Below the pieces are notes generated by a model. That model saw only the letters and a program-made list of their open reading frames with translations, was not told where the DNA came from and ran no database searches. Made by a program: the position numbers and the translations under genes. DNA of 64,000 bases from Octopus bimaculoides (taxonomy: Eukaryota). The DNA lies in NCBI RefSeq assembly GCF_001194135.2, contig NC_068981.1:125133778-125197777 (forward strand), given 5' to 3'. Of the stretch, positions 11,024-64,000 are shown one piece after another (positions within the stretch are counted from its first letter, which is position 1; each line of letters starts with the position of its first letter).

Positions 11024-11033
11024 NNNNNNNNNN

Positions 11034-16632: not shown

Positions 16633-16712
16633 GTATACTTCTACCTTTACAATGCTTTATTTGACTGGAAAGTAATACATCTGTATTGCAATATTAAAAT
16701 TTTTCATTGTAT

Positions 16713-16769
<57 letters not shown>

Positions 16770-17475
16770 NNNNNNNNNNNNNNNNNNNNNNNNNNNNNNN
16801 NNNNNNNNNNNNNNNNNNNNNNNNNNNNNNNNNNNNNNNNNNNNNNNNNNNNNNNNNNNNNNNNNNNNNNNNNNNNNNNNNNNNNNNNNNNNNNNNNNNN
16901 NNNNNNNNNNNNNNNNNNNNNNNNNNNNNNNNNNNNNNNNNNNNNNNNNNNNNNNNGAAATAAGAGGAAAAGAAAAAAGAAAAATTAATATTAATAATAA
17001 GGCAGAATGCTAAAACTGAAAGCATATTTTAATATAGATGTGTATAAGGAGGATTAAAAAGGATTTCTAACCAGCTTTCATTGCATAGCAAATTTTCAAG
17101 AAGAGGGAAAATGAAAATAGTGTTTTTTTACAAAAAAATAAAAAATATATAAAAAAATAAATATACCAATACATTATATTGTCTTTGAGCTTTGAAAGTT
17201 CAATGGTAATCCATGTAGATAATTGTTAGAAAGATTAGGATGCATGTATTTAAAATTAGTGTTCTGTTTAAAAAAGGCTGAATGTTTATGTGTCAAACAG
17301 GAAGTGTGGTGTCAAACAGGAAGTGTGAATAAGGGGAGACAATTCTATGGGTTTTATACTCTTTAATTGGAGTTCTGGACTCTTTGTCAACAGGAAGTTT
17401 ATGTCTGTTCTTAGAGAAACAAGAAGTAAATTTATATGTATTTCATTGGGTGGGCGAGAGAAGGGAATATGGTCA

Positions 17476-19278: not shown

Positions 19279-20369
19279 ATACTTTTCAGATTGAAAATGG
19301 GTTATGTGAAGTTTGAAACTCATATCAGGGTCACTCTTTGTAAACATTATTAAAATAAAAATTATTCCCCAAAATAGCCATCTCTACTCATCTTTTCAAA
19401 TGTATATATATATATATATAGAAAGAGAGAATATATATGTGTGTGTATACACACACATAAATGGGCTTCCACACAGTTTCTGTCAACCATATTCACTCAC
19501 AAGACATTGGTTGGCATGGGGCTATGTTAGAGGATGCTTTTGCATGATGTTATGCAATGGAACTGAACCTGAAACCATATTGTTGCAAAGATGAGCTGCT
19601 TAATCACACAACTCTGCCTGCACTTATAATGAATATGTAAGTACTGAAATATCTTCCTTCATTAAAAATGAGGTTAAATATTCGTAGAATTATAAATCTG
19701 ATCAATCATCTCAGACTTTTAGCCTGTAGCAGTTCAGCTTCTTCTGATTCACATATTTTATTGAACTTTAATTTCATGAAGCCAATGTGAGAAAGCATCT
19801 ATGTGCTCCCTCAACCTGATAGAAATTGCAACCAAATTCTCTCAAATTACATTTTATTTTCATAAAAAAGGGGAAGGAAGTATTGAATAATATAGACTTG
19901 AGTTAATATAGACTTTTAGTTGAATGACTCAACCCCAGTACTTATTTTTTTAAGCCTATATAAATATAGAATAATGGTACAACAAGGCACCAATGTTTAC
20001 TGGAAATAGCAGTCGATAAATTTACAATGCTATAGTAAAGCTTCACTGTATACAAACCAAAGAAAATATGTCTCCACTGGGTTTTATTGTTTTCTATTGC
20101 TGAAACTATCTGTCAATTGCAAGTCCTGAGTAAAAATATAGTCCAACATATCCCTAAAAGAACTGACTGGTCATGCCTGGAATACCTTTGGTCATGAGTT
20201 TGTTAAATTAAATTTCTCCTCAGACAAAATAACAACAATATTCCTAGAACACCTATTTTATTTTAAATAAGCTAACTTGCTTTTGCAACAAGATGAAGCC
20301 AATGGCATTATGATTTTGACAATGATGATGATGCCATCGACTACTACTACTGCTGCCGATAATGATGAT

Positions 20370-21951: not shown

Positions 21952-22011
21952 TTGCAACATTGATACAAAGGAGCAAGGATCGAATATTCATCATGATACG
22001 GATTGCCAAAA
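21952..22011 (-). CDS. FAM20B: FAM20B-like 60-bp coding exon
   Basis: cttctag|T TTT GGC AAT CCG TAT CAT GAT GAA TAT TCG ATC CTT GCT CCT TTG TAT CAA TGT TGC AA|gtaaga = (S)[19 protein letters not shown](K). Matches the family motif [20 protein letters not shown]. Phase 2-2. Confidence 0.95.
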
Positions 22012-22609
22012 CTAGAAGTTGAAGAAAAGATAATACATTAAAAGACAAAGAAAAACAAAAGAAATTTACATTGATATCCATTCAAACAACACAGATTTAT
22101 TATAAACAGACACATGGTCTGAGGCTTTGTTTCTTTACATGAATGTGTTTGGTGGTGGTGGTGGTGGTGATAGTGGTTTTAATGAAAGTGTGTTGTGATG
22201 GTCATTCATTAAGGTGGAAACAAAAGATCAGTATTTTTGTTTTTTTTCTATAATTTTTGTTCAATGAAGATGTGAATTTGCAGAGAATGTGGAGTTGGTT
22301 GACTCAATCACAGTAGATTTCTAGCAAACTGAGACAGCTCTACATGGTGTTTCAATCTGTTAGAAATAGCAGCCAAATTACCTTATTACATTGTACAGTT
22401 TTTAAAAAAAAAGTTGGGGGGAGGATACATTGAATAATGTAGTCCTAGATACACTGGAACAAAAATGTGATGATTATAACTGGAACACCTTTCTTCATAG
22501 GTCTACTTAATCAGGGCTAACCTGGGGTTAAACAATACCATTGATAACTGGTGCTTGGTTTACAACCCACCTAACCATCGTATGGATGAAAGAGAGAGAT
22601 GGTGTAATT

Positions 22610-39561: not shown

Positions 39562-39730
39562 TTAGCTAGTTTGTTGTCAATGTATGTTCTGCCCCATGGA
39601 TGTCTGTAAAGTTGCATTTTATGAGAGATCCAAAGAACAATGGTACCTTCGAGGGTGGTCTTCTGGGCACACACACCACTTTCTTTCCCTTTGCAGTAGT
39701 AACATTTTCCATAAAAGCAAGTGTTGTTAT
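39562..39730 (-). CDS. FAM20B: FAM20B-like internal coding exon (169 bp), Cys-rich insertion domain
   Basis: ttttccag|AT AAC AAC ACT TGC...CTA GCT AA|gtaagt. Encodes (D)NNTCFYGKCYYCKGKESGVCAQKTTLEGTIVLWISHKMQLYRHPWGRTYIDNKLA(K). CFYGKCYYC and RHPWGRTY are FAM20B signatures. The phase fits both neighbouring exons. Confidence 0.95.
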
Positions 39731-40262
39731 CTGGAAAAGAAAAAGATCAGTAAATAAATGCTTACTGTCTTGTACATTAATATAGTATACTAGACATGGG
39801 TATGGCTGTGTCGTAAAAAGTTTGCTTCCCAATCACATAATTCTGGATTCAGTCCTACTGCATGACACCTAAGACAAATGTCTTCTAATATAGCCCCGAG
39901 CTACCAAAGCCTTGTGTGTGGATTTGTTGGATGGAAACAGAAAAAAGCCCACTGTATGTACATACATATGTACATACATACATACATACATATGTACGTA
40001 TGTACATACATACATACATATGTACATACATACATACATGACACGTCCCATGCCAGTGACACATAAAAAACATCCAGTACACTGTGTGGAGTGGTTGGCA
40101 TTAGGAAGGGCACCCAACAGTAGAAACCAAGCTAAAACAGACTGGAGTCTGGTGCAGCTTTTCAACTTAGCAGTCCAGTCAAACTATCTTACCCATGCCA
40201 GCATGGGGAACAGATCCTAAAGAAGAAAAAGAAAGAAGGAAATATATATTTATGTTCACGGG

Positions 40263-40295
<33 letters not shown>

Positions 40296-41164
40296 TTCTT
40301 TGTGTTTGACCCCACCACTGCTTGAAACCAGTGTTGGTTTGTGTACATCTCTGTGGCTTAGCAGTTTGGCATAAGAAACCAATAAAATAAGTAACAGGCT
40401 TTAAAAAAATAGGAACTTGATTCAACTCATTCAACTAAAGCCCTTCCAGGTGGTGCCCCAGCATGTTTGCAGTTCAATGTCTAAAACAAGTAAAAGATCG
40501 GAAAGACTGGTAATCACTACTGCATCATAAACTGTTCAGTTATACCCGGATCCATTTATCATGCTCATATTTTTATATTTTAAACTTAGTGTTTGAGTAA
40601 TATTCAATATTTATTAAGTATAATGGCTATGATGTTAAGATACTGGATAACTGAATGAATGTTCATGAATTCAAACCTTACTAATGCAGTCACTGTGTTA
40701 TGGTCCTGGATGTATAACATATTACATTTCTTGACATATCATTCAGCAAGTTCTATCATGCTTTATTACAGAAATTATTGGTAGTAAAAGTACTGAAATG
40801 TTAATATTTGAACATACTAATTATTTAAACATGGAATCAAGATCAAGATATGCTAGAGTGTCATATACAAGCTATGATAAGTGGTGCTTAATATTTCCCA
40901 GACATATCCCTGACATTTAACATTTAAAATACAATTGTTATTACTTACTTAGGTAAATAATTCAATGAGAGAGCTGAAAACAGTGCTGGTTCAAAAAAAT
41001 GTTGGAAAAATTACTGGTGTAAGCAACAAAAGCAAGAGATATACAGCCCTATTGCAAATGTCAGTTTGTTATGTTAAGCTGAGTAGTAAAATATAAGAAG
41101 CGCCAAGACAAACCAATAGGGTGATCTCAATAATGTTTGGATAAACTATGTATCATGATGGGTA

Positions 41165-42919: not shown

Positions 42920-44310
42920 CATCATCATCATCATCATTTAATGTCTGTTTTCCATGCTGGCATGAGTTGGACAGTTTGATTGAAAACTGCTAAGCTGGGA
43001 AGCCACACCAGGTTCCAATCTAATATGGCATGGTTTCTACACCTGAATGTTCTTCCTAACACCAACCACTCCAAGAGTGTAGTGGATGCTTTAATGTGCC
43101 ACTGGCACAAGTGCCAGTTACTTGACCATGGCTGTGATCTCACTTGGCTTGACAGGTCTTCTCAAGTGCAGTATATTACCAAAGGTCTCAGTCACCTGTC
43201 ACTGCCTCCATGAGGCTCAATGTTCAAATGGTACTTTTTACGTGCCACCAGCATGGGTACCAATTACATGACACTAGCATCAGTCATGACTATGATTTCA
43301 CTTGGCTTGATGAGCTTTTTCAAGCATGGCAAAGATCTCGGTCACTTGTCATTGCCTCCACGAGACCCAATGTTAAAAGATCATGCTTTACCACCTTGTC
43401 CTATGTCTTCTTGGGTCTACTTCTTCTACAGATTTCCTCCACCATTAGAGTTCGGCACTTCTTCATACACCTGTCCTCATCCATATGCATCACATGACCA
43501 TATCAGTGCAGTCGTCTCTCTTGCACACCACATCTGACGCCTCTTTTGCCCAACTTTTCTCTCAAGATGCTTACACTCTGTTGAGCATGCACACTGACAT
43601 TACACATCCAGCAAAACATACTAGTTTCATTTCTTTCAAGCCTATGCATGTTCTCAGCAGTCACAGCCCATGTTTCACTGCCATGTAGTATAACTATTTG
43701 CACACAGACATCATACAATCTACTTCCATTCTGAGAGCCTTTGTTACCAACAGGTAACAAAGAGGTAGAAGCTCTCTGAACGTTCCCCAGCCTACTCTTA
43801 TTCTAGCAGCTACACTCTTGGAGCATCCACCCCCACTATTGATTTGATCACCTAGGCAACAGAAAATTTGATGGATTCTATTTTCTGTACATTTGTAGGG
43901 TTAATTGAACCTGTGCACCTTCCACACACAGAAACTGTTTTTCCTGTCAATTTTCCTCTGATATTCCTGCACCTCTTATGTGTCCATAGCTTACACCAGG
44001 TACGTCTTATGGAGTTTCTACCCACACCTTCTCTACAGATTGAGCAGGACTATCTACCTAAAGGGATTTATGATTTGTCTGCTCTCCTACTTACTAAGAC
44101 TCTGATTTTTGATAGATTAACTTTAAAGTCCTTTGATTCTAGACTCTACTTCTATGTCTGAAATTTCTTCTCTAGTTCTGGTAAGGATTCAGCTATAAGA
44201 ACAAGGTCATCAGCATAGAGGAGCTCCCAGAGGCAGCCCATCTTAAATTACTTTGTTATTGCCTGGAAGACTATGATGAACAAGAGACTTTCATCACCTG
44301 GTCCAGCAAT
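42920..44310 (-). mobile_element. 5'-truncated RTE-type LINE (RT core through 3' UTR and (GAT)n tail)
   Basis: LLFIIVFQAIT..WELLYADDLVLIAES (YADD at 44206-44217), then ILHGSETWAVT...LERNE...ILREKLG.RGVRCGVQERRLH*YGHV. The 3' UTR is shared with 2239, 58330-58800 and 63158. Confidence 0.85.
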
Positions 44311-48700: not shown

Positions 48701-51351
48701 ACAAGATGGGACTTTTGAATTACATATATAATCCCTCTGATTGACTTCCATACTGTTTCTATCTACCCATTTTCACTCACAAGACTTGGATCAATAATTA
48801 TGGTAAAGACATTTATGTACGATGCCAATCAGTAGGATCGAACCTGAAAACTCATGATTGCAAAGTGAACTTCTTAATCACTCAACCAAGACTGTATTTA
48901 CACTCTTAGTTCAAGAACAACATCAATAACAGTGAAGATGGAGAGATGGATGTTGATTACTGTTGTTGCTTAGCACAGGCTAGTATTGATTGAACAAACC
49001 TATGATTAAAGTTTATTTCTGTCATCTCATCTTTTTGTATATCATGAACTAATGTGTAAGAGGTAGATAGGATGTTTAGGGAATAATGGCATGTTTGGTG
49101 GATGTGTTTGTCATGATCAAAAGGCAACAAGTCCTCTCTCATTGCTCACTTCTTGGTACCCCACTCTGACTTATGTGGCTTCAAGAAACAAGAGCATGAC
49201 AAGTAGATTAACCCAGGTGAGGATCAAATCCTCAATAAAAGCACATGCTACCTTACTATGGGAAGACTGCCTCTAGTGTATTCAATGGGGGAGATCAGGC
49301 CTGTCTCGAGTTGTCTGGTTTTTATCTTGACTCTTACTTAAGGTAGGCCTAAATGGGAGAGTAAAGCTGATGTGCAAATCTTCCTGACCTAAATCCAATT
49401 TACCCACAAATTATGATCCATTTTGTCCTCCTTTTCCTTTATGATGAAAGTAGTGTAATTTGAAGGAAATTGACTGCCTTTACAGTAGGCAAACACAAAG
49501 GTTCCTTCACTGACTCATGTTATTAATTTTTTTTCAAAGGTACCAGTCTACACTTAATTCAGAAAAGATGTGACAGACGTAACAAAACAATCTTTTTGAA
49601 TATTGGGTTGTTAGATAACTTCATTTGTTTTTTCTTTTTTTTTGTCATTATTTTAATCATTTCCAGTGTTATTTCAACTAACATGAAAAATATTTTTATC
49701 ATAATGTCTTATGGGTTCTTTGTAGCTCTATTCTTCCTCTACAAAGTTTTGTTTATCGTTCTTGGAATTAGAATAAACTTGACCTCTTTTCACACATGAT
49801 GGACAGCCAAGTAGAAAATAAATGAACAAATTTATCTGATAACCTTTTGAAAATTACCAATAGAGTAGTAGCTGTTCACATGCTCTCAGTAAAATGGATT
49901 TTAACTCTAAACTGCTTTCACATTAAAATTAGGCATGATTACATAACAAATTGTATCAACTGGTATTTAATGAAAGGTAAACTCAAACAATTCTAGTAAA
50001 ATATTACAAGGCATTTTGTCTAATACTCTGATAGTTCTGCTAATTCATTGTTCATGTGACACAATCCTAAAAATTGCTGTAAAGTTTGTGTATCTGAGAA
50101 AAAAAAATATTTGTTCTGATTCTAACAAAACAACTTCATCAAAAATGGTAAATATATTAATGGCATTAAACTAGTTCTATTAACCAGCATTCATATGAGA
50201 AAGCCCTCACTAAACTGGGGGAAACAAAAATTCACATGAGTACCACTTAAAATCAAAAAGTGAAAACTAAATGCTTGCTCTGCTTACATACAAAATTCAA
50301 TAATAATAATAATCATAAAAAATACAGGAAATGTTTTGCCAACTTTTTTTTTAGACTTCATTGTTCATAGCCAACTGATTTTTTTATTTCAAATATAAAG
50401 GAGAGGTATTAAAGTCTAAAAATTCATGGTTCCATTTAAAAGCTATAATTAAAATTACATTAGCAGAAACATCTAATGTCTTGTCATCTCAGCCAACAAA
50501 AGTTAATGACCAATAAAATGAAATAATGTTCAGCTGGAGAGAAACAAAATTTTATTTATTAATTTTGTTTTCAAGTTTTGAACATCCTTTTACAACACTA
50601 ATAAGCTACAATTAAGAATAATTTGTCTAACCAATAACAACAGGGAATTACTGAAAGACCCCCTCCCCCCCAAAAATATCACATACTCTTATTGTTAGAA
50701 TTGTTTAACAAGGGTGCAAGGGTGGCCTTTTGATAATGAAGTGTACTTAAGAGCTATATGATTTCAAGTTCATGACATGTTGGGCAAGAGTCTTCTGCCT
50801 TAGCCTCAAGTCAGCCAAGATCTTGTTAGTGAAACCTGGTAAATATAAACTGTGTGGAAGCCTGCCTGAAGGACCTTTCTTGTTCTTAGGTGGAAGACTT
50901 AGATTGTCACACAATTTAATACCATTACCTAACCCTAATGTACATTTAGTAAAAGTTCATATTTTTGCAAATATTTGAAGTAGGTCTGACAATAACTTCC
51001 TTACTTCTTCTCACCAGTCTCAGCAGCTCTGAAAATGGTCATGGGCATCGTTCTTCTTCCTGCAACCAAACTATTAAGGAAAAGGGAAGAAATTCTGAAT
51101 TGGCACAGGCATGGCTGTATGGTAAGAAGTTTGCTTCTCAACCACATGGTTTTGAGTCTACTCCTACTGTGTAGCACCTTGGTCAAGTGTCTTCTACTAT
51201 AACCTCAGGCCAACCAAAGCCTTGCGAGTGGATTTTGTAAACAGAAACTGAAAGAACCTTGTTGTGTGCGTATGGGCATGCATATAGAAGAATATATTAA
51301 TCAAAGGAATTCTAACTTTGATTTTCATGTTTTATTTACAATTTTTTAATA

Positions 51352-52544
51352 AGATGATATAATATAATTAAATGATAGAATATTAGATGTCCATTCTGAC
51401 TGAACTAGTACTTTCATACATTAAACTATGCAATCTTCAGGCCCATATAGTAGTGGTGACAGTTATGTTTTACAATTTACAACTGTAGAGAGATGGCTAA
51501 ACTGTGTGCCTTAAATACATTCCTATAGGCTCCAGAATATCAATTTTTGCAAACTGTATTCTGACCAATCAGTGTGTGGCTTCACTAAATTACTTAAGTC
51601 GATTGGTGTTTGGTTTAGGCATCACGGTTTGTTGAACATGTCAAGAGACCTGCATTTTGACCCTGGCCAAAGCAGTAATTGTTTGGCTAGCCAAACAATT
51701 ACTGCTTTGGCCATCTCTGTCAGTTGACTATAAAGCTGAGAAGAAAAAAACAGATGTGTTTCTTTTGCTTAGTAATAAATGTGATAAAAAGACATAATCA
51801 CAATAAAAGGGAATGGTTCTAAAGATAAAAATATATTGTAGGGTCATTAAATAATCTCAAATAGATGGATAAGCTCATTTCTTTAGAATTTCTCTGTCTC
51901 TGTCTTCCTCAATGACTACCAGTATGACCTTCATAAAGCCAAATATATTGGTGACTTATTCTCCAATGTCAATCACCTGATGGTCCTTGTCTTCACAAAA
52001 TTTGATGAAAACAGTGTTGTTACACTCAGTATCAAAAAGGCATTCAACTGTGTTAAGTACACAAATCTGGTAAATGCTTGCCTATGGACTCCATCCATCT
52101 TTCTTCTCTTGGATCAATGGTTTTCTATCGGGTTTTGTGATTCAAGGTTCAGTTTTGTGTTCTGCATTCTTCCTCCAATACATCAGCAAACTTTGAGTTT
52201 TCACTGACAAGAATCACTGCTTTGGCCAGGGTCAAAATACAGGACTCTTGGCATGTTCAACAAACCATGACACCTAAACCAAACATCAATCAACTTAAGT
52301 AATTTAGTGAAGCCACACACTGATTAGTCAGAATACAGTTTGCAAAAATTAACATTCTGGAACCTATAGGAATGTATTTAAGGCACACAGTTTAGCCATC
52401 TCACTACAGTTGTAAATTGTACAATATAATTTTCAGTACTACTACATGAACCTGAAGATTGCATAGTTTAATGCATAAAAGTACTAGTTCAATCAGAATG
52501 GACATTTGATATTCCATCATTTCTATAAATTATCTTATATCATC
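51352..52544. repeat. Inverted repeat, about 330-bp arms (51352-51680 / 52212-52544), around a 500-bp spacer
   Basis: About 30 mismatches (mostly transitions) plus a 5-bp indel. A perfect 48-bp palindrome lies at 51665-51712. Confidence 0.92.
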
Positions 52545-52729
52545 TATATATATAAAAATGAGAATGTGTGTCTGTCTGTCTTGCAGAGTTCGAGCCCACG
52601 GCAACATAATATCTCCTCCACTATTTAAGTATTACGTGTCAAAAGTGAAACAAAAACACTCATGTCAAATACTTTCACTTTAAAAATGAAACTATTCTAC
52701 TAACTGAAACAATCACATTTTGATACTGT
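52543..52729 (+). mobile_element. Helitron-like 5' end running into the assembly gap
   Basis: a|TCTATATATATAAAAATGAGAATGTGTGTCTGTCTGTC is the typical TC start of non-autonomous animal Helitrons, and CpGs are retained. The 3' hairpin/CTAG end is not visible. Confidence 0.5.
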
Positions 52730-53701
52730 NNNNNNNNNNNNNNNNNNNNNNNNNNNNNNNNNNNNNNNNNNNNNNNNNNNNNNNNNNNNNNNNNNNNNNN
52801 NNNNNNNNNNNNNNNNNNNNNNNNNNNNNNNNNNNNNNNNNNNNNNNNNNNNNNNNNNNNNNNNNNNNNNNNNNNNNNNNNNNNNNNNNNNNNNNNNNNN
52901 NNNNNNNNNNNNNNNNNNNNNNNNNNNNNNNNNNNNNNNNNNNNNNNNNNNNNNNNNNNNNNNNNNNNNNNNNNNNNNNNNNNNNNNNNNNNNNNNNNNN
53001 NNNNNNNNNNNNNNNNNNNNNNNNNNNNNNNNNNNNNNNNNNNNNNNNNNNNNNNNNNNNNNNNNNNNNNNNNNNNNNNNNNNNNNNNNNNNNNNNNNNN
53101 NNNNNNNNNNNNNNNNNNNNNNNNNNNNNNNNNNNNNNNNNNNNNNNNNNNNNNNNNNNNNNNNNNNNNNNNNNNNNNNNNNNNNNNNNNNNNNNNNNNN
53201 NNNNNNNNNNNNNNNNNNNNNNNNNNNNNNNNNNNNNNNNNNNNNNNNNNNNNNNNNNNNNNNNNNNNNNNNNNNNNNNNNNNNNNNNNNNNNNNNNNNN
53301 NNNNNNNNNNNNNNNNNNNNNNNNNNNNNNNNNNNNNNNNNNNNNNNNNNNNNNNNNNNNNNNNNNNNNNNNNNNNNNNNNNNNNNNNNNNNNNNNNNNN
53401 NNNNNNNNNNNNNNNNNNNNNNNNNNNNNNNNNNNNNNNNNNNNNNNNNNNNNNNNNNNNNNNNNNNNNNNNNNNNNNNNNNNNNNNNNNNNNNNNNNNN
53501 NNNNNNNNNNNNNNNNNNNNNNNNNNNNNNNNNNNNNNNNNNNNNNNNNNNNNNNNNNNNNNNNNNNNNNNNNNNNNNNNNNNNNNNNNNNNNNNNNNNN
53601 NNNNNNNNNNNNNNNNNNNNNNNNNNNNNNNNNNNNNNNNNNNNNNNNNNNNNNNNNNNNNNNNNNNNNNNNNNNNNNNNNNNNNNNNNNNNNNNNNNNN
53701 N

Positions 53702-53750
<49 letters not shown>

Positions 53751-54211
53751 CTTTGTGTCTGTGTTTTTTCCCCATGACAGCTTGACAGCTGGGATCAGTG
53801 TGATTACATCCCCATATCTGAGTGGTGCAGCAGAAGAAACTGATAAAATAAGTATCAGGCTTAAAAAAATAAGCTAAATTCACTCAGCTAAAATTCTTCA
53901 GAATCATTATGTTCCAAAGTAGAGTACAAGTTTTCAGGTCATGTCTCTTGTTTAAGAATACAGTCCTCCCTTACTCCAGTTTGTCTTGAAGGTCCCATGA
54001 AAGGTCATGAGCACTACCTAGCTCCTGATTAAAAGATTAAAAAAAAAATTATTGATACTGTTGTTACCAATGCAGCAATGACTGACAACAACAACAGCAG
54101 CAGCAGCAGTTTAAAAACTATTTTCCATTACATGGATACGTCTACATGTTACACATGCTATTGTGAAAATTTTAATATGAAAAGTGATGAAAGAAATTCA
54201 GTCTTACTAAC

Positions 54212-54321
54212 CTTTGTTAAAAAATGTATCTAACAATCTTGAACTTGCCACAGGAATAACCTCAGTCTGCAAGTTTAAATAACGGCCCACTGTCAAAGGT
54301 GTCCTGCGAAAGCCAAGAATT
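54212..54321 (-). CDS. FAM20B: FAM20B-like xylosylkinase, internal coding exon (110 bp), first visible in the window
   Basis: Minus strand reads polypyrimidine-ttcag|A ATT CTT GGC...AAC AAA G|gttagt. Encodes [36 protein letters not shown], similar to human FAM20B [33 protein letters not shown] as I recall it. Entry phase 2, exit phase 1. Absent from the ORF track because it lacks an ATG. Confidence 0.93.
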
Positions 54322-54421
54322 CTGAAATAACAAATGAAAAAATTGTGTATTTGCAAATTTGTAGTTATTAGTTACTAGTTAGTAATGTACCTAAAACCAT
54401 ACCAATGAGCATACTTAAGCG

Positions 54422-54911
54422 CATCTCTATCAGTAGACTATAAAGCTGAGAAGAAAAAAACAGATGTGTTTCTTTTGCTTAGCAATAAATGTGATAAAAA
54501 GACGTAATCACAACAAAAGGGAATGCTTCTAAAGATAAAAATATATTGTAGGGTCATTAAATAATCTGAAATAGATGGATAAGCTCATTTCTTTAGAATT
54601 TCTCTCTCTGTCTTTCTCAATGACCACCAGTATGACCTTCATAAAGCCAAATATATTGGTGACTTAATTTCCAATGTCAATCACCTGAAGGTCTGTGTCC
54701 TCACAAAATTTGATGAAAACAGTGTTTCAGCATCAAAAAGGCATTCAATTGTAGTACGTACACAAATCTGTTAAATGCTTGCCTATGGACTCCATCCCTC
54801 TTTCTTCTCTTGGATCAATGGTTTTCTATTGGGTTTTGTGATTCAACATCCAGTTTTGTGTTCTGCATTCTTCCTTCAATACATCAGCAAGCTTTGAGTT
54901 ATCACTGCCAA
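54422..54911. repeat. Direct repeat of 51712-52210 (about 490 bp)
   Basis: About 28 differences including two small indels. Confidence 0.92.
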
Positions 54912-57900
54912 CAACACTCACTCCTACACAAATGATATCACTCTTCATTCTTCTCTAACCTTTTACAGCCAAATATCATCCATATTCAACCTAGACATCT
55001 TGCACCATGATGGAATGATAGAATATTACTGATTCTAGGAACAAAGGTTTTGTAAACATGTCCCAATGGAGTCATGCCAATCTTGTCTCTTCAACAGCAT
55101 AGATACAGTTTCTACATTTATGTAGGAAATGTCATATCTCCCACCCATCTAATGTGAACAACATGCGACTAGAACCTTCAAAGTCATTACAAATGCAAGG
55201 CATCACCATCAGTGAGGATCTTAGTCATGAATGCATATATTCTCCATATCAAAAATGGCATCACAAAGTAAATAGTCTACCTTTTCAGGGCCAGATAATA
55301 TATTTCATCCCCACCTTAACTATTAACCCTCTCAAAAGCTCAAATGAAACCCACATTGGAATACAGCAGGGCAAGGAGTGTTTTGCAAATATATACAAAT
55401 AGTGATTTCTGGTTGTATTTAAATGATGATGAAGAGAAGTTAATACAGGGTGAAGTTAGGCTGTCTTAGTCTGGTTTAGTACAAGTTGTAATATTTTTAC
55501 TGTACAATAAGGCTGCGAGCTGGCAGAATCATTACCACACCAGGCAAAATGCTTAGTGGCATTTCAACAGTCCTTACATCCTGAGTTCAAGTTCCGCCGT
55601 GGTTGACTTTGCCTTTTATCATTTTGGGGTGGGGGGGGTCAACAAATTAAGTACCAGTTGTGCACTGGAGTAAAGGTAATCTACTATCCCACTTCCCCCA
55701 AATTGCTGGCCTTGTGCCGAAATTTGCAATCAATACTTTTACTGAACATCGTCAACACACCAAGGTGATGTTAATGCAGTTGTTGTTCTCCTTACTGTTT
55801 AGTTCCAAACCAGCTATAATTGAGCAGATATATTCTATGATCAAAGTAATTCTAAAAGTGAACATCTCTCATTTTCCCTTTTCTCTTTCATTTTTCACAC
55901 TGCATATCTAGGACTATATGGAAACTAAATTACCAACATATAACACAAGGGTGTGATATAAAGAAAGATTTGGTTGTCATTCCTGCAGGTCAGCTGACCA
56001 CATAGAAGCTCTCTTATTGATTTGTTATTCACATAGTATATAAGTAAGGTTATTATAGTATCCCAATATCTAGGTGATATATGTGGATAAGATTACTACA
56101 GTACTAAGACATAATGAAAATGTTTAAATGAGTTCAGTACAGTAACAAACCTTACCAAAAGGTCCAGGAGACATTAATGTTATACAGTATCAAGATATCT
56201 TAGCGGGGTTAATACAGGTGGGTTGATATATACATTCAAACTCAAGATAAAATGCAAAAACACTGGTGCAAATGTAATACCAAAAACAATATTTTTTTTG
56301 TATCTACCTCTACAACGATAACTATTTCTTTGATAGACTCAATGTTAGATAAATCACCTCCAATGTATTACTGATATTATCAATCTTATTATAGCCATAG
56401 AAATGAGAAGCAAAGTTGAATTTGACAAGGTTCAAACAATAAGGATATAGAATGATGTATTAGGATGTAAGAGAATAGTGAACAAAATTTAGTGTGATTT
56501 TCTACCATTTGTTATAGACTCACTAATCATGGATTACTACATATAATCAGAGCAAGAACTAAGATGGAAAAGATGGTGTAAAATCTAGAGACCAGGGATA
56601 ATTTCTTCAATTTATTTATTTACTTCATTTATCTTTTAATTAGGAAGGAAGGCAACACCCAAGAGCTTTTCCAGAGTTTTAAGTACTGTTGGGCAAGAAA
56701 AAGAAGGTATACTCAAATTGAAAACTTGGCCTGAATTATTACAGCAGATGTTATCCCAGTTGACTGGTGGTTGTGTTAAACCAAGTGACAGATTACGACT
56801 ACTTCTAATGGAAGCTATGACAATATTTGGACTCAGAACACAAGAGACTGGGATAAATATTGCAAGGCATTCAATCAGGCATATCTATACTCTGCTCCAG
56901 ACTGGTACTTTTTTAACAACCCCAAAAGGATGAAAGGCAAAATTAACTTTTAGTACACTGCATTTTTTCCAGAATTGTTTCCCCTGTTACTACAAAGGAG
57001 AAAACTCATACAGTGGCATAATGCACCTACAGTGTGCTAAAGGTTAAGCTTGACAAGACTTGAACTCAAAATGGAACAAATATATTTTAGGCCCTTTATT
57101 TCAACACTCTAATGAGTCTACAATTTCATCACCTAAGTTACTTTATGACATATAACTCACTACTTCATTCTGTGACCAAATTCTGTCAGTGCCAAAATTA
57201 TATTTCTTCTGCCCCGGGTCAAAATTCAACCTCTAAAATAAGTACCGGTAAAACAACATAAGATACTGGAGTACATCCAATCATTTGAATCACTACAGAA
57301 GGACAAACATATCTCTGGTTAAAAGAAATCCATACTTTTGCTCTAAACATAACACTTATACACACAGACACACTGTGGTATAGATTCAGCTGTAAACAAG
57401 TCATAACAGAGTAAAGAAATAACATCAATAGATATACATACTTCATTCTATATAGGAGTGTGTTCCTCATATGTAAATGAGTATATGCACTATACACACA
57501 CCTACAATAAATAGGACATACTATTTTATGGCCTTATTGAAGGTTACAATTACAACTACTACTATAACAACCATAACTTTCACTACTGCTATTATTCTTT
57601 TTACAGCATAAAACAACTGCTGCTGCTGCTGATGACGATGACAATGACGACCATAACACCAGCTATAATAATAATTTCTAGCTTTAGCACAAGAGCACAC
57701 ATTTAGAGGAACAGAATGCAGTTGAGCTAATCAACCTCAGTTACTTGCACGATACTTGCTTTTACTGACCCACCCCCATCCAGATGGATGAAAGGCAAAG
57801 TTGATTTCAGCAGGATTCACAATTAGGTTGTATAAAACGATGCAGCTAAATACAGCAAGGCATTTTTATCAAACATTTTATTGATTCAGCTAATGATTGC

Positions 57901-58329
57901 ATTTCACAAGCAGGGACAACATATAAGACAAAATACAAAATTTATTACAGAAACATATTAGTCATAAAGCTTATATGTATGTATAAACAAATACATATGT
58001 TAGTCATATATATACACATGAATACACAGTATACCACACACACAAAATTAGACAAAGTAAGCACAAATTTGAAAGAGGAAAGGGAAATAGGCCCATGAAG
58101 GGACTAAAAGCTATGTTTCTATTGCTTGTCAAGAGACTTTATTATTAATTATTCTATGGAAAACCTGGCATTAACTCGTTTGTTGTTTATTGTACAGTTT
58201 TTTAGAGTTGTTATAGAAAGCATACTGACATATGGGTGTGAATGCTGGATGCTTATGAAAGCAATCAAAATCAAGGTAAGTAGAACATATACCACGATGA
58301 TAAGGTTTCTTGGGAACAAGATTTACTGC

Positions 58330-58800
58330 ACAGAAGACCCGTCAAGTCAAATGAAATCATAGTCATGACTGATGCTCATGTCATGTAACTAGCACTCATG
58401 CTGAAGGCACATAAAGAGCACCTTTCAAGCATTGGGTCTCATGGAGGCAAAATGACTGAGTTCCTTTCAAGCATTGGGTCTCATGGAGGCAAAATGTTTG
58501 AGTCCCTTTCGAGCACTAGGTTACACAGAAGCAATGACCAAGACCTTTGACATTATGTCGTGCTTGAGAAGAAGACCCATCAAGCCAAGCAAAATTGCAG
58601 TCGTGGCAGATACTGGTGTTACGCAAATGGCACCCATGCTGGTGGTACATAAGAGCACCCATTACACTCTCGGAGTGGTTGGTGTTATGAAGGGCATCCA
58701 GCCATAGAAAACTATGGCAAATCAGACTGGAGTCAGGTGCAGCCTTCTAGCTTACTAGCTCTGGTTAAACCATCCAACCCATGCCAGCATGGACAATGGA
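58330..58800 (+). mobile_element. RTE 3' region with internal tandem repeats
   Basis: A 34-bp unit cctttcaagcattgggtctcatggaggcaaaatg at 58421 and 58463, a partial third copy at 58504, then the shared 3' tail. Confidence 0.65.
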
Positions 58801-59029
58801 CATTTACAGAAACCATCAAATTATTTACATTATTTACAGAAACCATCAAATAATGCAAACTTAAGTTTGTGACACACTGTTGGCAAAGAACTAATGAAAT
58901 TGAACAACAACTATTACAATTTTAAGTCAACCAGTCCAAGGTAAAATGAGAAAAGGGAAATCATGTCAAACAGCACTAAATGTCAAGATCTATAGTGAAA
59001 TCAAGTGTTATTGTTGCACCCCATCAAAA

Positions 59030-59373
59030 TCACTGAAAAACCGGGTTTTGAGTTGCTGGAACACCCTGCATACACAGTCCAGATCTTGCTGCCCCATCTC
59101 CTTTGACTATCACCTCTTTTGATTAATCAAACATCCTTTATGAAGTGTTGATTTGCTACAGACAAAGAAGCACATGAAGTGGTGTATAAATGGCTGTGTG
59201 ACCAGCTGAAAATCTCCTTCCCTGATGGAATACCCAAGCAATGTGGACCACTGGAAGACGTGCATCAAAATGCAAGGAGACTATGTTGAAAAATAATGTA
59301 TTGTTCAACCCCTGATTTTGTTTTAATAAATTACAGAAACAAGAATGCATATAATTTTTTACTCATCCTTGTA
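59030..59373 (+). mobile_element. mariner (DD34D) transposase C-terminal remnant and right TIR
   Basis: GFELLEHPAY-SPDLA-(S)DYHLF...DGIPK...W..CIKMQGDYVEK* across frameshifts, ending ttactcatccttgTA. Confidence 0.75.
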
Positions 59374-60299
59374 AAACAACACATCTATCAAAACTAACAC
59401 CAGAAACTATCATCATCACATTCATGGTAGCTTCAGAGCTGCCACTATTAATATTAGCATGGTGAAAGACAAATGTGGAGAAGATAGAAAAGCTGAAAGA
59501 TCCTTTGACAATACATAAAGCCAAAGAAATACTAAGCAATGCTTATAACAAACCACAAATCAGATTTATAGATGTTTCAGTTAGGAACATTTATATATTG
59601 GTACAGAAAATAAAAGTGAAGGAACAGGTTTTGAAAAAACTAGAAGAAAAGAGACAGAAATGGTAATAAGAAATAATACTAGATGACTAGAAGAAAATCA
59701 GATACACTTAACAATAAGTGAAGCAGAGAGTAAGATGTTGGCCAATGTTCTGTGAAGAGGGAACAAATCAATGTATCAGTATGGATCAAGACATAGCTAA
59801 CAGAAAAGTGTGTATGGAAAAACAATGGCATACTCACACTTATTGATGCTGAGAAGAAAGGGGCAAAGAAATGCTGGTATGCATACATATATATGTGCAT
59901 GCAACAGTGCTCACGGGAGCATATTTGCATGCATGTGTGCATGTATGTAAGTGTGTGTCTGGGAGAGAGACAGACAGACAGACAGACAGAGAGAGGACTA
60001 CTTTTAGCTGACAAAAAGTTTTAGTAGGAGAGAATAAAGAACTCTGCTTCCATGTGGGAAATGGCCATACACAGTATACAGAAAAGGCGTATGTAGGAAT
60101 TGTGTACTGTATACCCAATATACATGGGTATGTAAGTGATGCTGGGTACATAAGTGATCACAGGCAAACTAACAGAAAAGAACTCTGAATACAGTTGATG
60201 TAGTAGAGTAACAAGTAGTGAAAGAGCTTATTTAATGAGTTCCTTCGACTCCTTAGAAGGACTTCCAAAAGTAATTGATAATAGCAGTTGAGGTGGGGG

Positions 60300-60835
60300 G
60301 TTCCAAAGGCATAATCTAAGTAAGAATGAGTTGGAAAATGCTTGAAGAGATATCGCATTTGCTGGCAACAAAGGTACTCACTTATCCTCTCTGAGTGAAC
60401 AGTAGTTTGCATGATATTTGCATAAAAAATTCAATATTGCATGGTAGCAAAACATAGGCAATGAATGCAGATGAATGAAGGCTGGAAAAATATTGAGGCT
60501 AACTCTCTTCACTGCATTCATAATATCAGTGTGACAATGGGACACAAATGAAGTGGGGATAAGAGAAGTCCGCTGTATTGGACAAGAGGGAAGTTTCCAC
60601 TGTTATGGACATGATGTAGTTGAAGGGCAATGATTAAATGTAAAAGGTGTCAAGCAAACTGAGTAGAAGTAACTATTGGAAAATGAAATGCAAGGAAGAC
60701 AATGTGAAGAAGTGGTGAAACTAATCTCAATGGGTGAATTTTCATGAAGATGACAACTGACATGGTACTGAGTTGAAAAAGACTAGTCCAACATGAGAAA
60801 GCATAGCAAAACAGACAAAGATGATGATGATGAAT
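60300..60835 (+). mobile_element. Old RTE LINE 3' remnant
   Basis: GIREVRCIGQEGSFHCYGH is similar to GIRGVRCSVQERRLRWYGH, and the region ends in (GAT)n. Confidence 0.55.
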
Positions 60836-61088
60836 ACCCACACATACAGATGAAAGACAAAAATAAAAAGAATGTATAATAGAATTCAATAAAACCTGTG
60901 GTATTAAAATTTTAAAAAAACATAAACAAAAAGGAAACAGAAATTTAAAGCTTATTCAGTTGTAAATGACCGATTGCAATAAATACATTGCAGTAAGTAA
61001 ATAAAAAACATAAAACATCCATGCTCATGTCTGAATTGTAGATGTAGCTATATAGAAATAGTAATACTGTATATATCAATATATAGAT

Positions 61089-61172
<84 letters not shown>

Positions 61173-62473
61173 TTTTGATTTGGTGTTAGGATGCTGCTGT
61201 AGAAAACTAAACTTGACAGAATCAATTACATTTACTCTTAGAAGCAATTTTAACAGATTTTGTTTCCGTCAAGTAGAGTTGAATAACAATAAAAAAAAAA
61301 TAAAGTAAAAAGAGTTGTGAACATTTGCACTTTAAACAGAGTAATTCTACAGCTTTAAGTAATACAAGATGTGATACAGGGTTGTTAATTTAATAAAAGC
61401 TTTGAATGAGTAGAGAGCAGGTAGATGACAATTACAGCTAGTATTCAACTACATAAATGTGATGGCATAAGTATAACATGCAAGTTTCATACTTGGAAAT
61501 CCATATAGTTGTCGATATTACTTATCCTCAGGCCAGCTCTGACTGAGCGGACTTATGATCAAAGGCATTCAAGCCATAACCAACATGCAATTTCATATAT
61601 CCAGAATACATTGTTAAAAGTATCCATCTATATTTAAGATGGTAAGGTGTACTATGGAGGGAGATTTGGTTGCTTTTTCTATCAGCTAAAGTGACGGAGA
61701 CTATTTCATTGAGAAACCAAACTATAAATGGAGAGGATTTTATTGTCAATTAACAGAACACCACTGTTATTGACTACTGCAAATATAAAGGTGTTTGTTG
61801 AGAGAGAGAGAGAAAGAGAGAGAAGAAAGTCAGTTTTTATTTCATTTTCTCTAATATGAGAGAAATGAGCAGTATCACTCCCTTGCTGACAATGACAGTA
61901 GGGGTAATACTCTTTTTACTCTTTTACTTGTTTCAGTCATTTGACTGTGGCCATGCTGGAGCACCGCCTTTAGTCGAGCAAATCGACCCCAAGACTTATT
62001 CTTTGTAGGCCTAGTACTTTTTCACAGGCTGATACCTTCAGAGAAAACGAATATGGACAGAAAAAGAGACGCAGACATCTGAAGTGGAATGATGGGGTGA
62101 GGTGTTTAGTGTGGGATTTTGGTTAAAAGATAATGCAGAGTGACGACAAAAGAACGAAAGGTAGGCACAGGACAGAAGAATGATACAGTATGTCAGTGTA
62201 CCAGTGATTGAAGCATGTTGGTAACTGATATTTGTCAATCAATCAATTAGCTTTCATTTGAATAAGGTAAACAATGTTTGTGAATGGAACAGTGAGCAGT
62301 ATTCCATTATGGATCATATTGTCATGTAGATGGTCAGAAATAGTTTAAAGACAAAAATTTTTTTATTCTTAAAGTGGCTAAGAAATTCTTATTTTTGAAC
62401 AGTTTATTCTAACATCAGCTCAAATTTCATTCAAAAGAAAAAAAATTATTTCTAGAGACAGCAACTGTTTTAA

Positions 62474-63157
62474 CCATTTAGCATTCAGATTATTTTGTCA
62501 AATGTAACACTTTTTCTTTCACACTGTTCTTAATCATGCATTATCTCATAGCTTTGGAATTTTCATGATGTAATTGTATATATTTATAATGGCATTGAAG
62601 GTAGGTGTGAAAGGCTGGATCTGGTTGGTTAGAACATAAAACAAGTAGCATATATGGGTGGTTTAAATGCTAAAGGGTTAGCCCTTTTGATATCAACCTG
62701 CCTGAGACTGCTCCTGGGTCTATGATACAAAATTCTTGTTTTTAAAGTGATCTGAATTAAAAACAACCATGAAAATTTCATGTTAATTTATGATACAAAT
62801 TAAGGCAACAAGCTGATAAGATGTTAGCATGCCAGACAAAATGGTTAGTGGCATTTCCTCTGGCTTTACATTCTAAGTTCAAATGCCTTTCATCCTTCTT
62901 GGGGTTGGTAAAATAAGTAGCAGTCAAGTGCTGGGGTTGATGTAATTGATTTGCTTGTCCTCTAAAAATTGCTGGCCTTGTGTCAAAATTAGAAAGAAAG
63001 AATTTATGTTCTAAACACTAGATTAATAATGACAAAAATTTATTTTACTAAATTCTTTATCTCTTTTATCTTTTATTTTAGTTGAATGAATTGATCTCTA
63101 CTTATTTTTCTTTTAAGCCTGGTACTTATTCTATCAGTCTCTTTTGCTGAACCACTA
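62474..63157. mobile_element. Nested cluster: MITE E + MITE F, interrupted by SINE B, followed by a SINE-A fragment
   Basis: E at 62474-62677, shared TTAG at 62678-62681, F from 62682. SINE B at about 62800-62995 is flanked by aatttatg. Confidence 0.72.
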
Positions 63158-63655
63158 CATTCATCATCATCATCATCATCGTTTAACGTCCGCTTTCCAT
63201 GCTAGCATGGGTTGGACGATTTGACTGAGGACTGGTGAAACCGGATGGCAACACCAGGCTCCAATCTAAATTTGGCAGAGTTTCTACAGCTGGATGCCCT
63301 TCCTAACGCCAACCACTCAGAGAGTGTATTAGGTGCTTTTACGTGTCACCTGCACGAAGGCCAGTCAGGCGATACTGGCAACGGCCACGCTCGAAATGGT
63401 GTCTTTTATGTGCCACCCGCACAAGCCAGTCCAGGGGCACTGGCAACAATCTCGCTCGAAAATCCTACGGGAGCCAGTCAGGCGGTACTGGCAACGGCCA
63501 CGCTCAAAATGGTGCATCTTATGTGCCACCCGCACAAGAGCCAGTCCAGGGGCACTGGCAACGATTTTACTTGGCTTGCCGGGTCTTCTCACGCACAGCA
63601 CATTTCCAAAGGTCTCGGTCAGTAGTCATCGCCTCGGTGAGGCCCAATGTACGCA
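63158..63655 (-). mobile_element. Young 5'-truncated RTE LINE
   Basis: ORF end RTLGLTEAMTTDRDLWKCAVREKTRQAK*, CpG-rich 3' UTR with a 113-bp tandem unit (63360, 63473) and a (GAT)n tail. Confidence 0.82.
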
Positions 63656-64000
63656 CATTATGGGTAGATAAACACACTGAAATCAGTGTACTTCAAGAGA
63701 AATTTGGTAACAACAAAAGGGTTAAGATGAGAAATTTCATAGTCCTAAAGAGATAGCTCAACCTTTCTCATGGTAATATCACTGATTCTATAAGGCAAAA
63801 AGGCATGGGAGTAAGAGCAACTAAATTTGTTAATCATGAAATTTACTCAAATTTCATGATTTAATACTCTTCAGAATGTGAAATTGTTTGATTTTGGAGT
63901 ACACACTCTCTGAAGTTATAAAAGAGTGGATGAAGTTTCAGTTTGCATTATCAAATGGAACTACAGGCATCTTTCAACTTATGTCATATGGTGTTATGCT

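What the first reader, a model, noticed from the sequence alone, without database searches (positions are those of the whole stretch)
51352..54911. Foldback rearrangement that captured a copy of the neighbouring intron and brackets a FAM20B exon
Seen: arm A (51352-51680), a perfect 48-bp palindrome (ggccaaagcagtaattgtttggct|agccaaacaattactgctttggcc, 51665-51712), a 500-bp block B' (51712-52210) and reverse-complement A (52212-52544). B' is a direct copy of 54422-54911, which lies on the other side of exon 54212-54321. The B'/A junction has microhomology (atcactgc ends B and also begins the right arm). Both duplications are diverged to a similar degree (roughly 6-10%). Inference: either one multi-step template-switching event (FoSTeS/MMBIR type with fold-back priming) or a long-TIR element that captured host DNA (Pack-MULE-like). 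Possible consequences are a 330-bp dsRNA stem in the pre-mRNA and direct repeats that could delete the exon by recombination.
Basis: partly seen in the sequence, partly recalled or inferred. Interest (0 to 1): 0.72.

Follow-up and report, generated by a model that had tools for sequence, protein, structure and literature searches.

The report
Intronic palindrome split by copied neighbouring DNA
Inside a long intron of a FAM20B-like kinase gene lies a roughly 700-bp DNA palindrome interrupted near its centre by a 500-bp copy of intron sequence from about 2.7 kb away; it is a real scar of DNA breakage and repair (or of a hairpin-shaped mobile element), with no sign of a function.

Summary
Inverted arms 51349-51683 / 52209-52543 are 335 nt and 89% complementary, traceable to 51342/52557. 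A perfect 48-bp palindrome lies at 51665-51712. Block B' (51712-52218) is 92% identical to B (54422-54918), and the two bracket a 110-nt minus-strand FAM20B exon (54212-54321). The N gap (52730-53701) lies inside a ~14.5-kb intron. It touches none of the repeats, and the exons either side are consecutive in protein alignments, so no exon is hidden.

New here: B' is flanked by a perfect 12-bp direct repeat (ACTGCTTTGGCC; 17/20 if extended). Deleting B' plus one copy restores a spacer-less 701-bp palindrome with about 35 perfect base pairs on each side of its axis. Four other whole-length hairpin repeats occur in the window. A and B show no coding remnant, no convincing TSD and no further copy in 64 kb.

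Best reading (about 0.45): a pre-existing palindrome, probably a hairpin-type element, broke near its centre and was repaired with a short fold-back fill-in plus filler templated from the neighbouring intron. A single multi-step template-switching event is not excluded (about 0.2).

The structure is ordinary in kind, so interest is low to moderate.

The parts
51342..51688 (.). Left arm A of the palindrome, up to the symmetry axis at 51688|51689. The high-identity part is 51349-51683.
   Evidence: 335 nt at 89% complementary to the right arm. blastn extends it to 51342.
51665..51712 (.). Perfect spacer-less 48-bp palindrome with CTAG at its centre. The right half (51689-51712) is a 24-nt inverted copy of the inner end of the left arm.
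   Evidence: 24+24 nt, 100%. Rfam gives only sub-threshold miRNA-like hits that reflect the hairpin.
51701..51712 (+). Left copy of the 12-bp direct repeat ACTGCTTTGGCC flanking B'.
   Evidence: perfect 12/12. My own count from the sequences printed gives 17/20 when extended leftwards.
51713..52215 (+). B': inserted copy of intron block B. It forms the 525-nt loop between the arms.
   Evidence: 92% identical to 54423-54915. No Pfam domain in any frame. No protein relatives.
52216..52227 (+). Right copy of the 12-bp direct repeat. Its first 3 nt (ACT) are the strict microhomology between the end of B and arm A'.
52216..52557 (.). Right arm A', the reverse complement of A.
52730..53701 (.). Assembly gap of estimated length inside the same intron, followed directly by a (TA)n(TG)n array.
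   Evidence: The exons either side are consecutive.
54212..54321 (-). 110-nt FAM20B-like coding exon bracketed by B' and B.
54422..54918 (+). B: the presumed parental intron block. It starts 101 nt from the exon's acceptor.
   Evidence: No TSD around it beyond chance.
51108..51274 (+). Head of a composite tRNA-like SINE lying left of the structure. It may be the same SINE copy as the tail after the gap.
   Evidence: hmm positions 4-170, E 2.9e-37.
53717..53873 (+). Microsatellite-preceded tail of the same SINE family, in the same orientation.
   Evidence: hmm positions 160-311. Head joined to the post-gap sequence gives a full-length SINE, E 1.6e-60.

Best explanation
Two layers of events. First, a roughly 700-bp spacer-less palindrome (A.A') existed in this FAM20B intron. 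It was most likely a hairpin-shaped, MITE-like mobile element of a kind common in this region, or otherwise an older fold-back inverted duplication. Second, the palindrome broke close to its symmetry axis, as long perfect palindromes tend to do through hairpin or cruciform formation.

The break was repaired by end joining with DNA synthesis. One end carries a 24-nt inverted fill-in of itself, of the hairpin-opening or local fold-back type, and this produced the perfect 48-bp palindrome. A 504-nt filler was then copied from intron sequence about 2.7 kb away (B). Synthesis was primed or annealed at an imperfect 10-13-nt homeology (strict ACT) at the right junction and joined with no more than 1 nt of homology at the left. 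This left 12 bp (17/20) duplicated on both sides of the filler.

The insertion turned an unstable spacer-less palindrome into a stable inverted repeat with a 525-nt loop, and that is probably why it survived. Both layers have since decayed neutrally to 7-10% divergence.

Shown: the geometry, the flanking repeat, the restoration of the palindrome, the microhomology, and the hairpin potential of the transcript. Inferred: the order of events, the break, the repair pathway, and the mobile-element origin of A.A'. No function is indicated. The likely consequence is a long intronic dsRNA stem, a plausible ADAR or Dicer substrate.
For: - B' is flanked by a perfect 12-bp direct repeat. 12-mers repeated at a spacing of 505-525 bp occur at only 30 of 1.33 million positions in the window, mostly in microsatellites.
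- Removing B' plus one copy restores a 701-bp palindrome with a 100% central bin, about 35 perfect pairs on each side of the axis.
- B'/B divergence (K2P 0.066) is lower than A/A' divergence (0.097), in the direction expected if the palindrome is older, though not significantly (p = 0.17).
- The parent copy B is only about 2.7 kb away and in the same orientation, as expected for templated repair synthesis.
- B has no TSD of its own, no coding remnant and no other copy in 64 kb, so it looks like ordinary intron DNA.
- Four other whole-length hairpin repeats lie in the window, and the 16-kb one has extra terminal copies, so hairpin-shaped mobile elements exist here.
- All four have degenerate centres, whereas the restored A.A' centre would be perfect, which is the unstable state.
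- Literature: non-spaced inverted repeats are breakage-prone, a 320-bp repeat with a 0- or 12-bp spacer stalls replication but one with a 52-bp spacer does not, and 'centre-break palindrome revision' is an established outcome (PMC3300023).
- Literature: 5-34-bp fold-back fill-ins and templated insertions form together at repaired breaks (PMC11724301).
Against: - A single age for all parts cannot be rejected: 29/325, 31/493 and 0/24 differences give chi-square p of about 0.14 (own arithmetic from the counts).
- The 12-bp repeat is not independent of the palindrome geometry. It is also produced if a polymerase leaves the A' template, copies B, and returns about 12-16 nt behind its point of departure.
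- Arm A has no second copy in the window and no convincing TSD: only a 3-bp ATA in AT-rich flanks, and no 8-bp match when the printed flanks are read by eye. Its mobile-element origin is therefore unproven.
- The restored perfect centre differs from the looped centres of the other hairpin repeats.
- There are no reads, no outgroup and no genome-wide copy number.
Confidence: 0.45

Rival explanations
1. One multi-step replicative template-switching event (FoSTeS/MMBIR). A nascent strand copying a unique A switched strands at the self-complementary CTAG and copied back 24 nt. It then jumped to B about 2.7 kb away and copied about 500 nt. Finally it returned to the A template at the TCACT microhomology, copied all of A in reverse, and rejoined in the AT-rich flank.
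For: - The CTAG centre and the microhomology at the B'/A' junction are typical of such events.
- Inverted microhomology of 2-8 bp is typical of fold-back junctions (PMC3907307).
- The divergences of A/A', B/B' and the 48-bp palindrome are statistically compatible with one age.
- A and B each have exactly two copies in 64 kb.
- The restored centre is perfect, unlike the looped centres of the resident hairpin repeats.
Against: - It needs four switches, including a return to within 12-16 nt of the departure point.
- The left B' junction has no more than 1 nt of homology.
- Classical fold-back inversions carry a spacer of 0.7-70 kb.
- If the SINE head (51108-51274) and tail (53717-53873) are one element, neither arm is ancestral unique intron DNA.
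- A/A' is nominally more diverged than B/B'.
Confidence: 0.2
2. A long-TIR non-autonomous DNA transposon whose internal region is B', either native or captured before it moved (Pack-MULE-like transduplication; the reader's second option). On this reading B at 54.4 kb is the parental fragment or a fragment of another copy.
For: - Long inverted termini enclose an unrelated 500-bp block.
- Hairpin or TIR-type repeats are frequent in the window.
- The block may sit inside a split SINE, which would make it an insertion.
Against: - No TSD of 4-11 bp at either candidate end pair (own reading of the flanks printed). Only a 3-bp ATA in AT-rich sequence.
- No other copy in the window.
- No transposase-related sequence.
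- A parent copy 2.7 kb away would be an extraordinary coincidence in a large genome for an element that transposed after capture.
- The 12-bp repeat flanking B' and the restored palindrome point to an insertion into the element, not to a native interior.
Confidence: 0.12
3. B is a dispersed retroposon (a SINE or a 5'-truncated LINE 3' fragment). One copy inserted by target-primed reverse transcription into the palindrome with a 12-20-bp TSD, and the copy at 54.4 kb is an independent neighbour.
For: - A 12-bp perfect (17/20) flanking duplication is in the TSD range of LINE-mediated insertion.
- Microhomology at one junction is common at the 5' junctions of such insertions (established knowledge).
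- LINE remnants occur in this intron.
Against: - No poly(A), microsatellite or other tail at either end of B'.
- No TSD around B above the control rate.
- No reverse-transcriptase or other coding remnant.
- No third copy in a window that holds at least 13 SINE heads.
- Two same-orientation copies within 3 kb would be a coincidence unless the family is very abundant.
Confidence: 0.1
4. Assembly artefact: a chimeric or hairpin contig, or a collapsed or duplicated haplotype.
For: - The assembly is a gapped short-read-style scaffold with six N gaps, and the gaps checked abut microsatellites.
- Perfect palindromes are hard for assemblers.
- No reads could be laid on the region.
Against: - The arms differ at 29 sites plus indels, and the B copies at 31 sites plus indels, with a natural transition-rich spectrum. 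Artefactual duplicates would be near-identical.
- The whole structure is internal to a 17.9-kb gap-free contig and lies 172 bp or more from the gap.
Confidence: 0.05

Closest known systems
Centre-break palindrome revision (Cunningham et al. 2003 Mol Cell Biol 23:8740, as cited in PMC3300023)
   Same: A long spacer-less palindrome is broken at or near its axis and rejoined with a small asymmetric deletion or insertion that stabilises it. Here the interruption lies 24 bp from the axis, and the result is a spaced inverted repeat.
   Different: Described for transgenes and somatic cells, mostly with small central deletions. Here the evidence is a germline-fixed, old event with a 504-bp templated filler, and the break itself is inferred.
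Local fold-back fill-ins and templated insertions at repaired double-strand breaks (PMC11724301)
   Same: A short (5-34 bp) inverted duplication of the break end occurs together with an insertion copied from another locus, using microhomology at one end and end joining at the other. The 24-nt inverted copy plus B' fit this pattern.
   Different: Those events were measured in yeast at an induced break. Here the insert is larger than most of them, and its template lies only about 2.7 kb away in the same intron.
Fold-back inverted duplications and MMBIR/FoSTeS complex rearrangements (PMC3907307)
   Same: An inverted duplication with short inverted microhomology at the turn-round point, and junction insertions in a minority of cases.
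   Different: Human fold-back inversions have a disomic spacer of 766-70,466 bp and are megabase-scale. Here the arms are 0.35 kb, the axis is spacer-less, and the 'spacer' is foreign DNA.
Hairpin-type MITEs, foldback elements, and Pack-MULE-like transduplication
   Same: Long terminal inverted repeats make up most of a non-coding element, with host DNA between them. Similar whole-length palindromic repeats lie nearby (16015-16637 and others).
   Different: No TSD, no second copy of A in 64 kb, and no similarity to the other hairpin repeats. The parent fragment is adjacent, so capture followed by transposition is unlikely.
Inverted intronic repeat pairs (e.g. inverted Alus) as long dsRNA or ADAR substrates
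   Same: A stem of about 335 bp, about 95% paired, is predicted in the pre-mRNA. 16 of the 29 arm differences are G.U on the transcribed strand.
   Different: Editing or small-RNA production at this locus was not tested, and the stem comes from one palindromic unit rather than two independent insertions.

Membership tests
TIR DNA transposon / MITE / foldback element | Terminal inverted repeats | tested here: met
   335-nt arms, 89% complementary.
TIR DNA transposon / MITE / foldback element | Target-site duplication directly flanking the termini | tested here: inconclusive
   Only a 3-bp ATA at 51352/52545 in AT-rich flanks. The 8-bp flanks at either candidate end pair match at about 3/8 or not at all (own reading of the flanks printed). 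A 2-bp TA-type TSD cannot be judged.
TIR DNA transposon / MITE / foldback element | Multiple dispersed copies in the genome | not testable with these tools
   No further copy in the 64-kb window. Nothing in the metagenome or viral collections. This genome is absent from the protein collection.
TIR DNA transposon / MITE / foldback element | Sub-terminal or internal sub-repeats (foldback or IR-DR type) | tested here: not met
   No direct repeats inside the arm, and no tandem repeats.
Pack-MULE-like transduplicating element | Host-derived fragment between the TIRs | tested here: met
   B' is 92% identical to intron block B.
Pack-MULE-like transduplicating element | 9-11-bp TSD and Mutator-type termini | tested here: not met
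   No TSD of that length at either candidate end pair (own reading of the flanks printed). The termini are AT-rich and unlike any I can name.
Pack-MULE-like transduplicating element | Element mobilised after capture, with the parent fragment at an unlinked locus | tested here: not met
   The parent copy lies about 2.7 kb away in the same orientation.
Fold-back inversion / MMBIR complex rearrangement | Inverted duplication with microhomology at the breakpoint junctions | tested here: met
   CTAG at the axis. ACT (relaxed 8-10 nt) at the B'/A' junction, and no more than 1 nt at the A/B' junction.
Fold-back inversion / MMBIR complex rearrangement | Ancestral state with single copies of each segment | not testable with these tools
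   No orthologous intron or second haplotype could be obtained.
Fold-back inversion / MMBIR complex rearrangement | All junctions of the same age | tested here: inconclusive
   K2P 0.097 for A against 0.066 for B, and 0/24 differences in the central palindrome. Homogeneity is not rejected.
LINE-mediated retrocopy (for B') | TSD of 7-20 bp | tested here: met
   12-bp perfect flanking repeat.
LINE-mediated retrocopy (for B') | 3' poly(A) or simple-repeat tail | tested here: not met
   Neither end of B' or B carries a tail.
LINE-mediated retrocopy (for B') | Other family members with their own TSDs | tested here: not met
   B has no TSD above the control rate, and there is no third copy in the window.
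FAM20B (glycosaminoglycan xylosylkinase), host gene | Fam20C-type kinase domain, closest to FAM20B among the paralogues | tested here: met
   PF06702 on the homologues. 5XOM FAM20B scores E 1.7e-78 and 267 bits, against 211 bits for FAM20C and 182 bits for FAM20A.

The most novel reading that the evidence does not exclude
The A.A' unit is an active or recently active hairpin-shaped mobile element of cephalopods that acquires neighbouring host DNA at its fragile centre, which would be a repair-driven, in-situ form of transduplication. Alternatively, the resulting 335-bp intronic dsRNA stem is used (hyper-edited or diced) to modulate FAM20B expression.
Probability: 0.07. Interest if true: 0.55.

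Novelty: new member of a known kind. Interest (0 to 1): 0.27.

Why it matters
If the reading is right, this locus is a clean, naturally fixed example of how a perfect palindrome is 'defused' in an animal germline. Each step of the repair is still legible: the fold-back fill-in, the templated filler from 2.7 kb away, the microhomology and the flanking duplication. That is useful as an illustration of palindrome instability and of how host DNA ends up inside hairpin elements.

It does not point to a new kind of system, and nothing suggests that it changes the FAM20B protein.

Tried and rejected
- Orthologous introns: the host exon pair found only FAM20 relatives of 73% identity or less. The closest, a Logan contig (L001), lacks this intron altogether.
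- Exact look-ups of 20 mechanical ORFs, from A, B', B and from within 10 kb of the structure: none is in the 15-billion-protein collection.
- A 3559-aa composite of all six frames of both arms and both B copies: no hit at E <= 1.
- Pfam on the B frames: nothing.
- Exact DNA scans with stretches conserved in both copies: metagenome contigs twice and viral contigs once, all with 0 hits.
- Rfam: only sub-threshold miRNA-like hits on the 48-bp hairpin, rejected as meaningless.
- TSD searches at the outer ends of the palindrome and around B: nothing above chance.
- Independent insertion of two inverted copies of a repeat: rejected, because the arms meet at an exact symmetry axis.
- Haplotype or duplication artefact: rejected on divergence and on position inside a gap-free contig.
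- 'Excising the palindrome alone rebuilds the SINE' failed. Only the microsatellite part of the SINE matches the palindrome's right flank.
Full report
GAP FIRST

The N run 52730-53701 (972 N, length estimated) lies inside an intron, so reading frame across it is not an issue. The host gene runs on the minus strand. The exon to the right of the gap is 54212-54321 (acceptor tttcag|, donor |gttagt). The next exon downstream starts at 39732. The two join in frame as ...FFNK|DNNTCFYGKC....

This junction aligns without any gap to a homologue in which the two parts are contiguous. The five in-window exons together align as one uninterrupted stretch (query 1-242, chain 144-389) to solved FAM20B. The gap therefore hides no coding exon, and order and orientation across it are sensible at gene level.

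The gap is followed immediately by (TA)n(TG)n, and other gaps checked in the window also abut such arrays. That is the signature of short-read scaffolding. None of the repeats touches the gap: A' ends 172 bp before it and B starts 720 bp after it. Only the quoted B'-B spacing (2710 bp) depends on the estimated gap length.

THE OBSERVATION

- Inverted repeat: 51349-51683 / 52209-52543, 335 nt, 89% complementary. BLAST extends it to 51342/52557, E about 1e-127.
- Perfect palindrome: 51665-51712, 24+24 nt.
- Direct repeat: B' 51712-52218 versus B 54422-54918, 92% identical.
- Copy number in the window: A and B have exactly two copies each in the 64 kb.
- Divergence: A/A' has 29 substitutions in 325 sites (23 transitions, 6 transversions; K2P 0.097). 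B/B' has 31 in 493 (17:14; K2P 0.066), plus 7-nt and 2-nt indels. The two rates do not differ significantly (Fisher p = 0.17).
- Gene label: FAM20B is supported, with 5XOM glycosaminoglycan xylosylkinase at 267 bits, FAM20C at 211 and FAM20A at 182, and PF06702 on all homologues.

B' is bounded by a perfect 12-bp direct repeat, ACTGCTTTGGCC, at 51701-51712 and 52216-52227. By my own count from the printed sequences, it is 17/20 when extended leftwards.

Deleting B' together with one copy restores a 701-bp palindrome. The central bin of its self-alignment is 100%, with about 35 perfect pairs on each side of the axis and no spacer. The axis is GGCT|AGCC.

Across the whole window, only 30 of 1.33 million positions have a 12-mer repeated 505-525 bp away, and most of those are microsatellites. 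This repeat is not statistically independent of the palindrome, however. It is the overlap between the 24-nt right half of the perfect palindrome and the inner end of arm A'.

THE JUNCTIONS

Left junction: the homology to B starts at C 51712, so at most 1 nt is shared.

Base 52215 (C) is B-like and base 52219 (G) is A-like. The strict microhomology is therefore ACT, inside an imperfect 10-13-nt stretch that resembles both templates (8/10 to B, 9/10 to A).

This combination, one nearly blunt junction and one with microhomology, is typical of synthesis-dependent or alternative end joining.

IS A OR B A MOBILE ELEMENT?

For B, nothing says so:
- no Pfam domain in any frame;
- no relative among 5.8 billion predicted proteins for any frame of A, A', B' or B;
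- no tail at either end;
- no TSD around the 54.4-kb copy above the control rate;
- no third copy in a window that holds at least 13 heads of the local SINE family.

For A the picture is open. It has no second copy in the window, no sub-repeats, and no TSD beyond a 3-bp ATA in AT-rich flanks.

The window does contain four other whole-length palindromic repeats: 16015-16637 (623 bp), 11271-11488, 15350-15746 and 12291-12465. The first has additional terminal copies at 19957-20063 and 14238-14280. Hairpin-shaped mobile elements are therefore common here. None resembles A. All four have degenerate, loop-like centres (45-60% identity in the middle against 85-95% in the arms), whereas the restored A.A' centre is perfect.

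CONTEXT

A composite SINE (tRNA-like head, internal TA/TG microsatellite, tail) has a head at 51108-51274 and a microsatellite plus tail at 53717-53873, in the same orientation. Joined together, they make a full-length copy (E 1.6e-60). The whole block between them, including the palindrome and the gap, may therefore be an insertion into that SINE's microsatellite. Orphan heads and tails are frequent in this window. By my estimate such a pairing arises by chance roughly once in ten heads, so this is only suggestive.

MECHANISM

The most economical account has two layers.

First, a spacer-less palindrome A.A' existed. It was a hairpin element, or the product of an older fold-back.

Second, it broke near its axis. 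Such sequences are known to be breakage-prone. A 320-bp inverted repeat stalls replication with a 0- or 12-bp spacer but not with a 52-bp spacer, and 'centre-break palindrome revision' is an established outcome (PMC3300023).

Repair left two marks:
- a 24-nt inverted fill-in of the left end, in the size class of the local fold-back insertions seen at repaired breaks (PMC11724301);
- a 504-nt filler templated from the nearest available homeology, block B in the neighbouring intron.

The repair converted the palindrome into a stable inverted repeat with a 525-nt loop.

It is compatible with the CTAG axis, with the microhomology, and with a single age for all parts (chi-square p about 0.14 from the counts). 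Classical fold-back inversions do differ in carrying a spacer of 0.7-70 kb (PMC3907307). I cannot separate the two models without an outgroup or a genome-wide copy number.

Capture followed by transposition (Pack-MULE-like) is unlikely, because the parent copy is adjacent and there is no TSD. A retroposon origin of B' is unlikely, because there is no tail and B has no TSD. An assembly artefact is unlikely, because the copies differ at dozens of sites and the structure is internal to a 17.9-kb gap-free contig.

CONSEQUENCES

The transcribed (minus) strand of 51342-52557 folds into an almost continuous stem of about 335 bp, with MFE -617 kcal/mol. Of the 29 arm differences, 16 are G.U wobbles on that strand and 7 are A.C (binomial p = 0.09), so roughly 95% of the stem is paired. 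That makes it a plausible substrate for ADAR or Dicer, but this was not tested.

B' and B are direct repeats around a 110-nt exon whose loss would shift the frame. At 92% identity and with a longest identical run of 47 bp, recombination between them is possible but should be inefficient.

VERDICT

The structure is real and well preserved, and it is mechanistically instructive. It is ordinary in kind: a repaired palindrome in an intron, with no evidence of function.

Noticed in passing
window 41-351, 5387-5648, 6880-7148, 28357-28636 (full copies); 51108-51274 and 53717-53873; 39797-39974 and 40228-40411: A composite SINE family with a tRNA-like head, an internal (TA/TG)n microsatellite, and a tail ending GGCTTTAAAAAAATAAG. 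Two head/tail pairs in the same orientation are separated by extra DNA at the microsatellite, about 250 bp in one case and about 2.4 kb in the other. The larger one contains the palindrome and the gap. The internal microsatellite may be an insertion or rearrangement hotspot.
   Followed up: partly
window 16015-16637; 11271-11488; 15350-15746; 12291-12465; also 19957-20063 and 14238-14280: Four further whole-length palindromic (hairpin-shaped) repeats of 175-623 bp, 70-84% self-complementary, all with degenerate centres. The 16-kb one has extra terminal copies, so it is probably a mobile hairpin element. None is similar to arm A.
   Followed up: partly
window gaps 11024-11033, 12004-12163, 16770-16956, 30467-30839, 34615-34839, 52730-53701: Six assembly gaps. 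The BLAST hits show (TA)n/(TG)n dinucleotide arrays next to them, and the sequence itself confirms this for 52730-53701. The gaps probably mark unresolved microsatellites. The inverted-repeat pairs reported between 30.6 kb and 34.8 kb are N-versus-N artefacts.
   Followed up: yes
window 51352-51676 versus 52216-52545: The arm differences are strongly transition-biased, 23:6 against 17:14 in B/B'. On the transcribed strand, 16 are G.U-compatible and 7 are A.C (p = 0.09). This could reflect weak selection or a mutational asymmetry that keeps the RNA stem paired. It is not significant.
   Followed up: partly
L001 969-1274 (Logan SRR32575148) versus window 54212-54321 / 39582-39732: In the closest FAM20 homologue found (73% identity), the sequence across FFNK|DNNTC is one continuous ORF, with a break after CYYCK instead. 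The roughly 14.5-kb intron that hosts the palindrome is therefore absent from, or placed differently in, that organism.
   Followed up: no
window 43503-43760 (-) and 58126-58362 (+): Mechanical ORFs with motifs that I recognise from memory as LINE reverse-transcriptase C-terminal remnants (..LHGSETWAVT.., ..LTYGCECWML..). This suggests decayed non-LTR retrotransposons in the FAM20B introns. They were not run against Pfam.
   Followed up: no
window 13443-13643, 21954-22025, 32622-32807, 39582-39732, 54212-54321 (all minus strand): Five consecutive FAM20B kinase-domain exons are spread over about 41 kb. The N-terminal exons were not found in 54322-64000, so the gene probably extends beyond the window.
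   Followed up: partly
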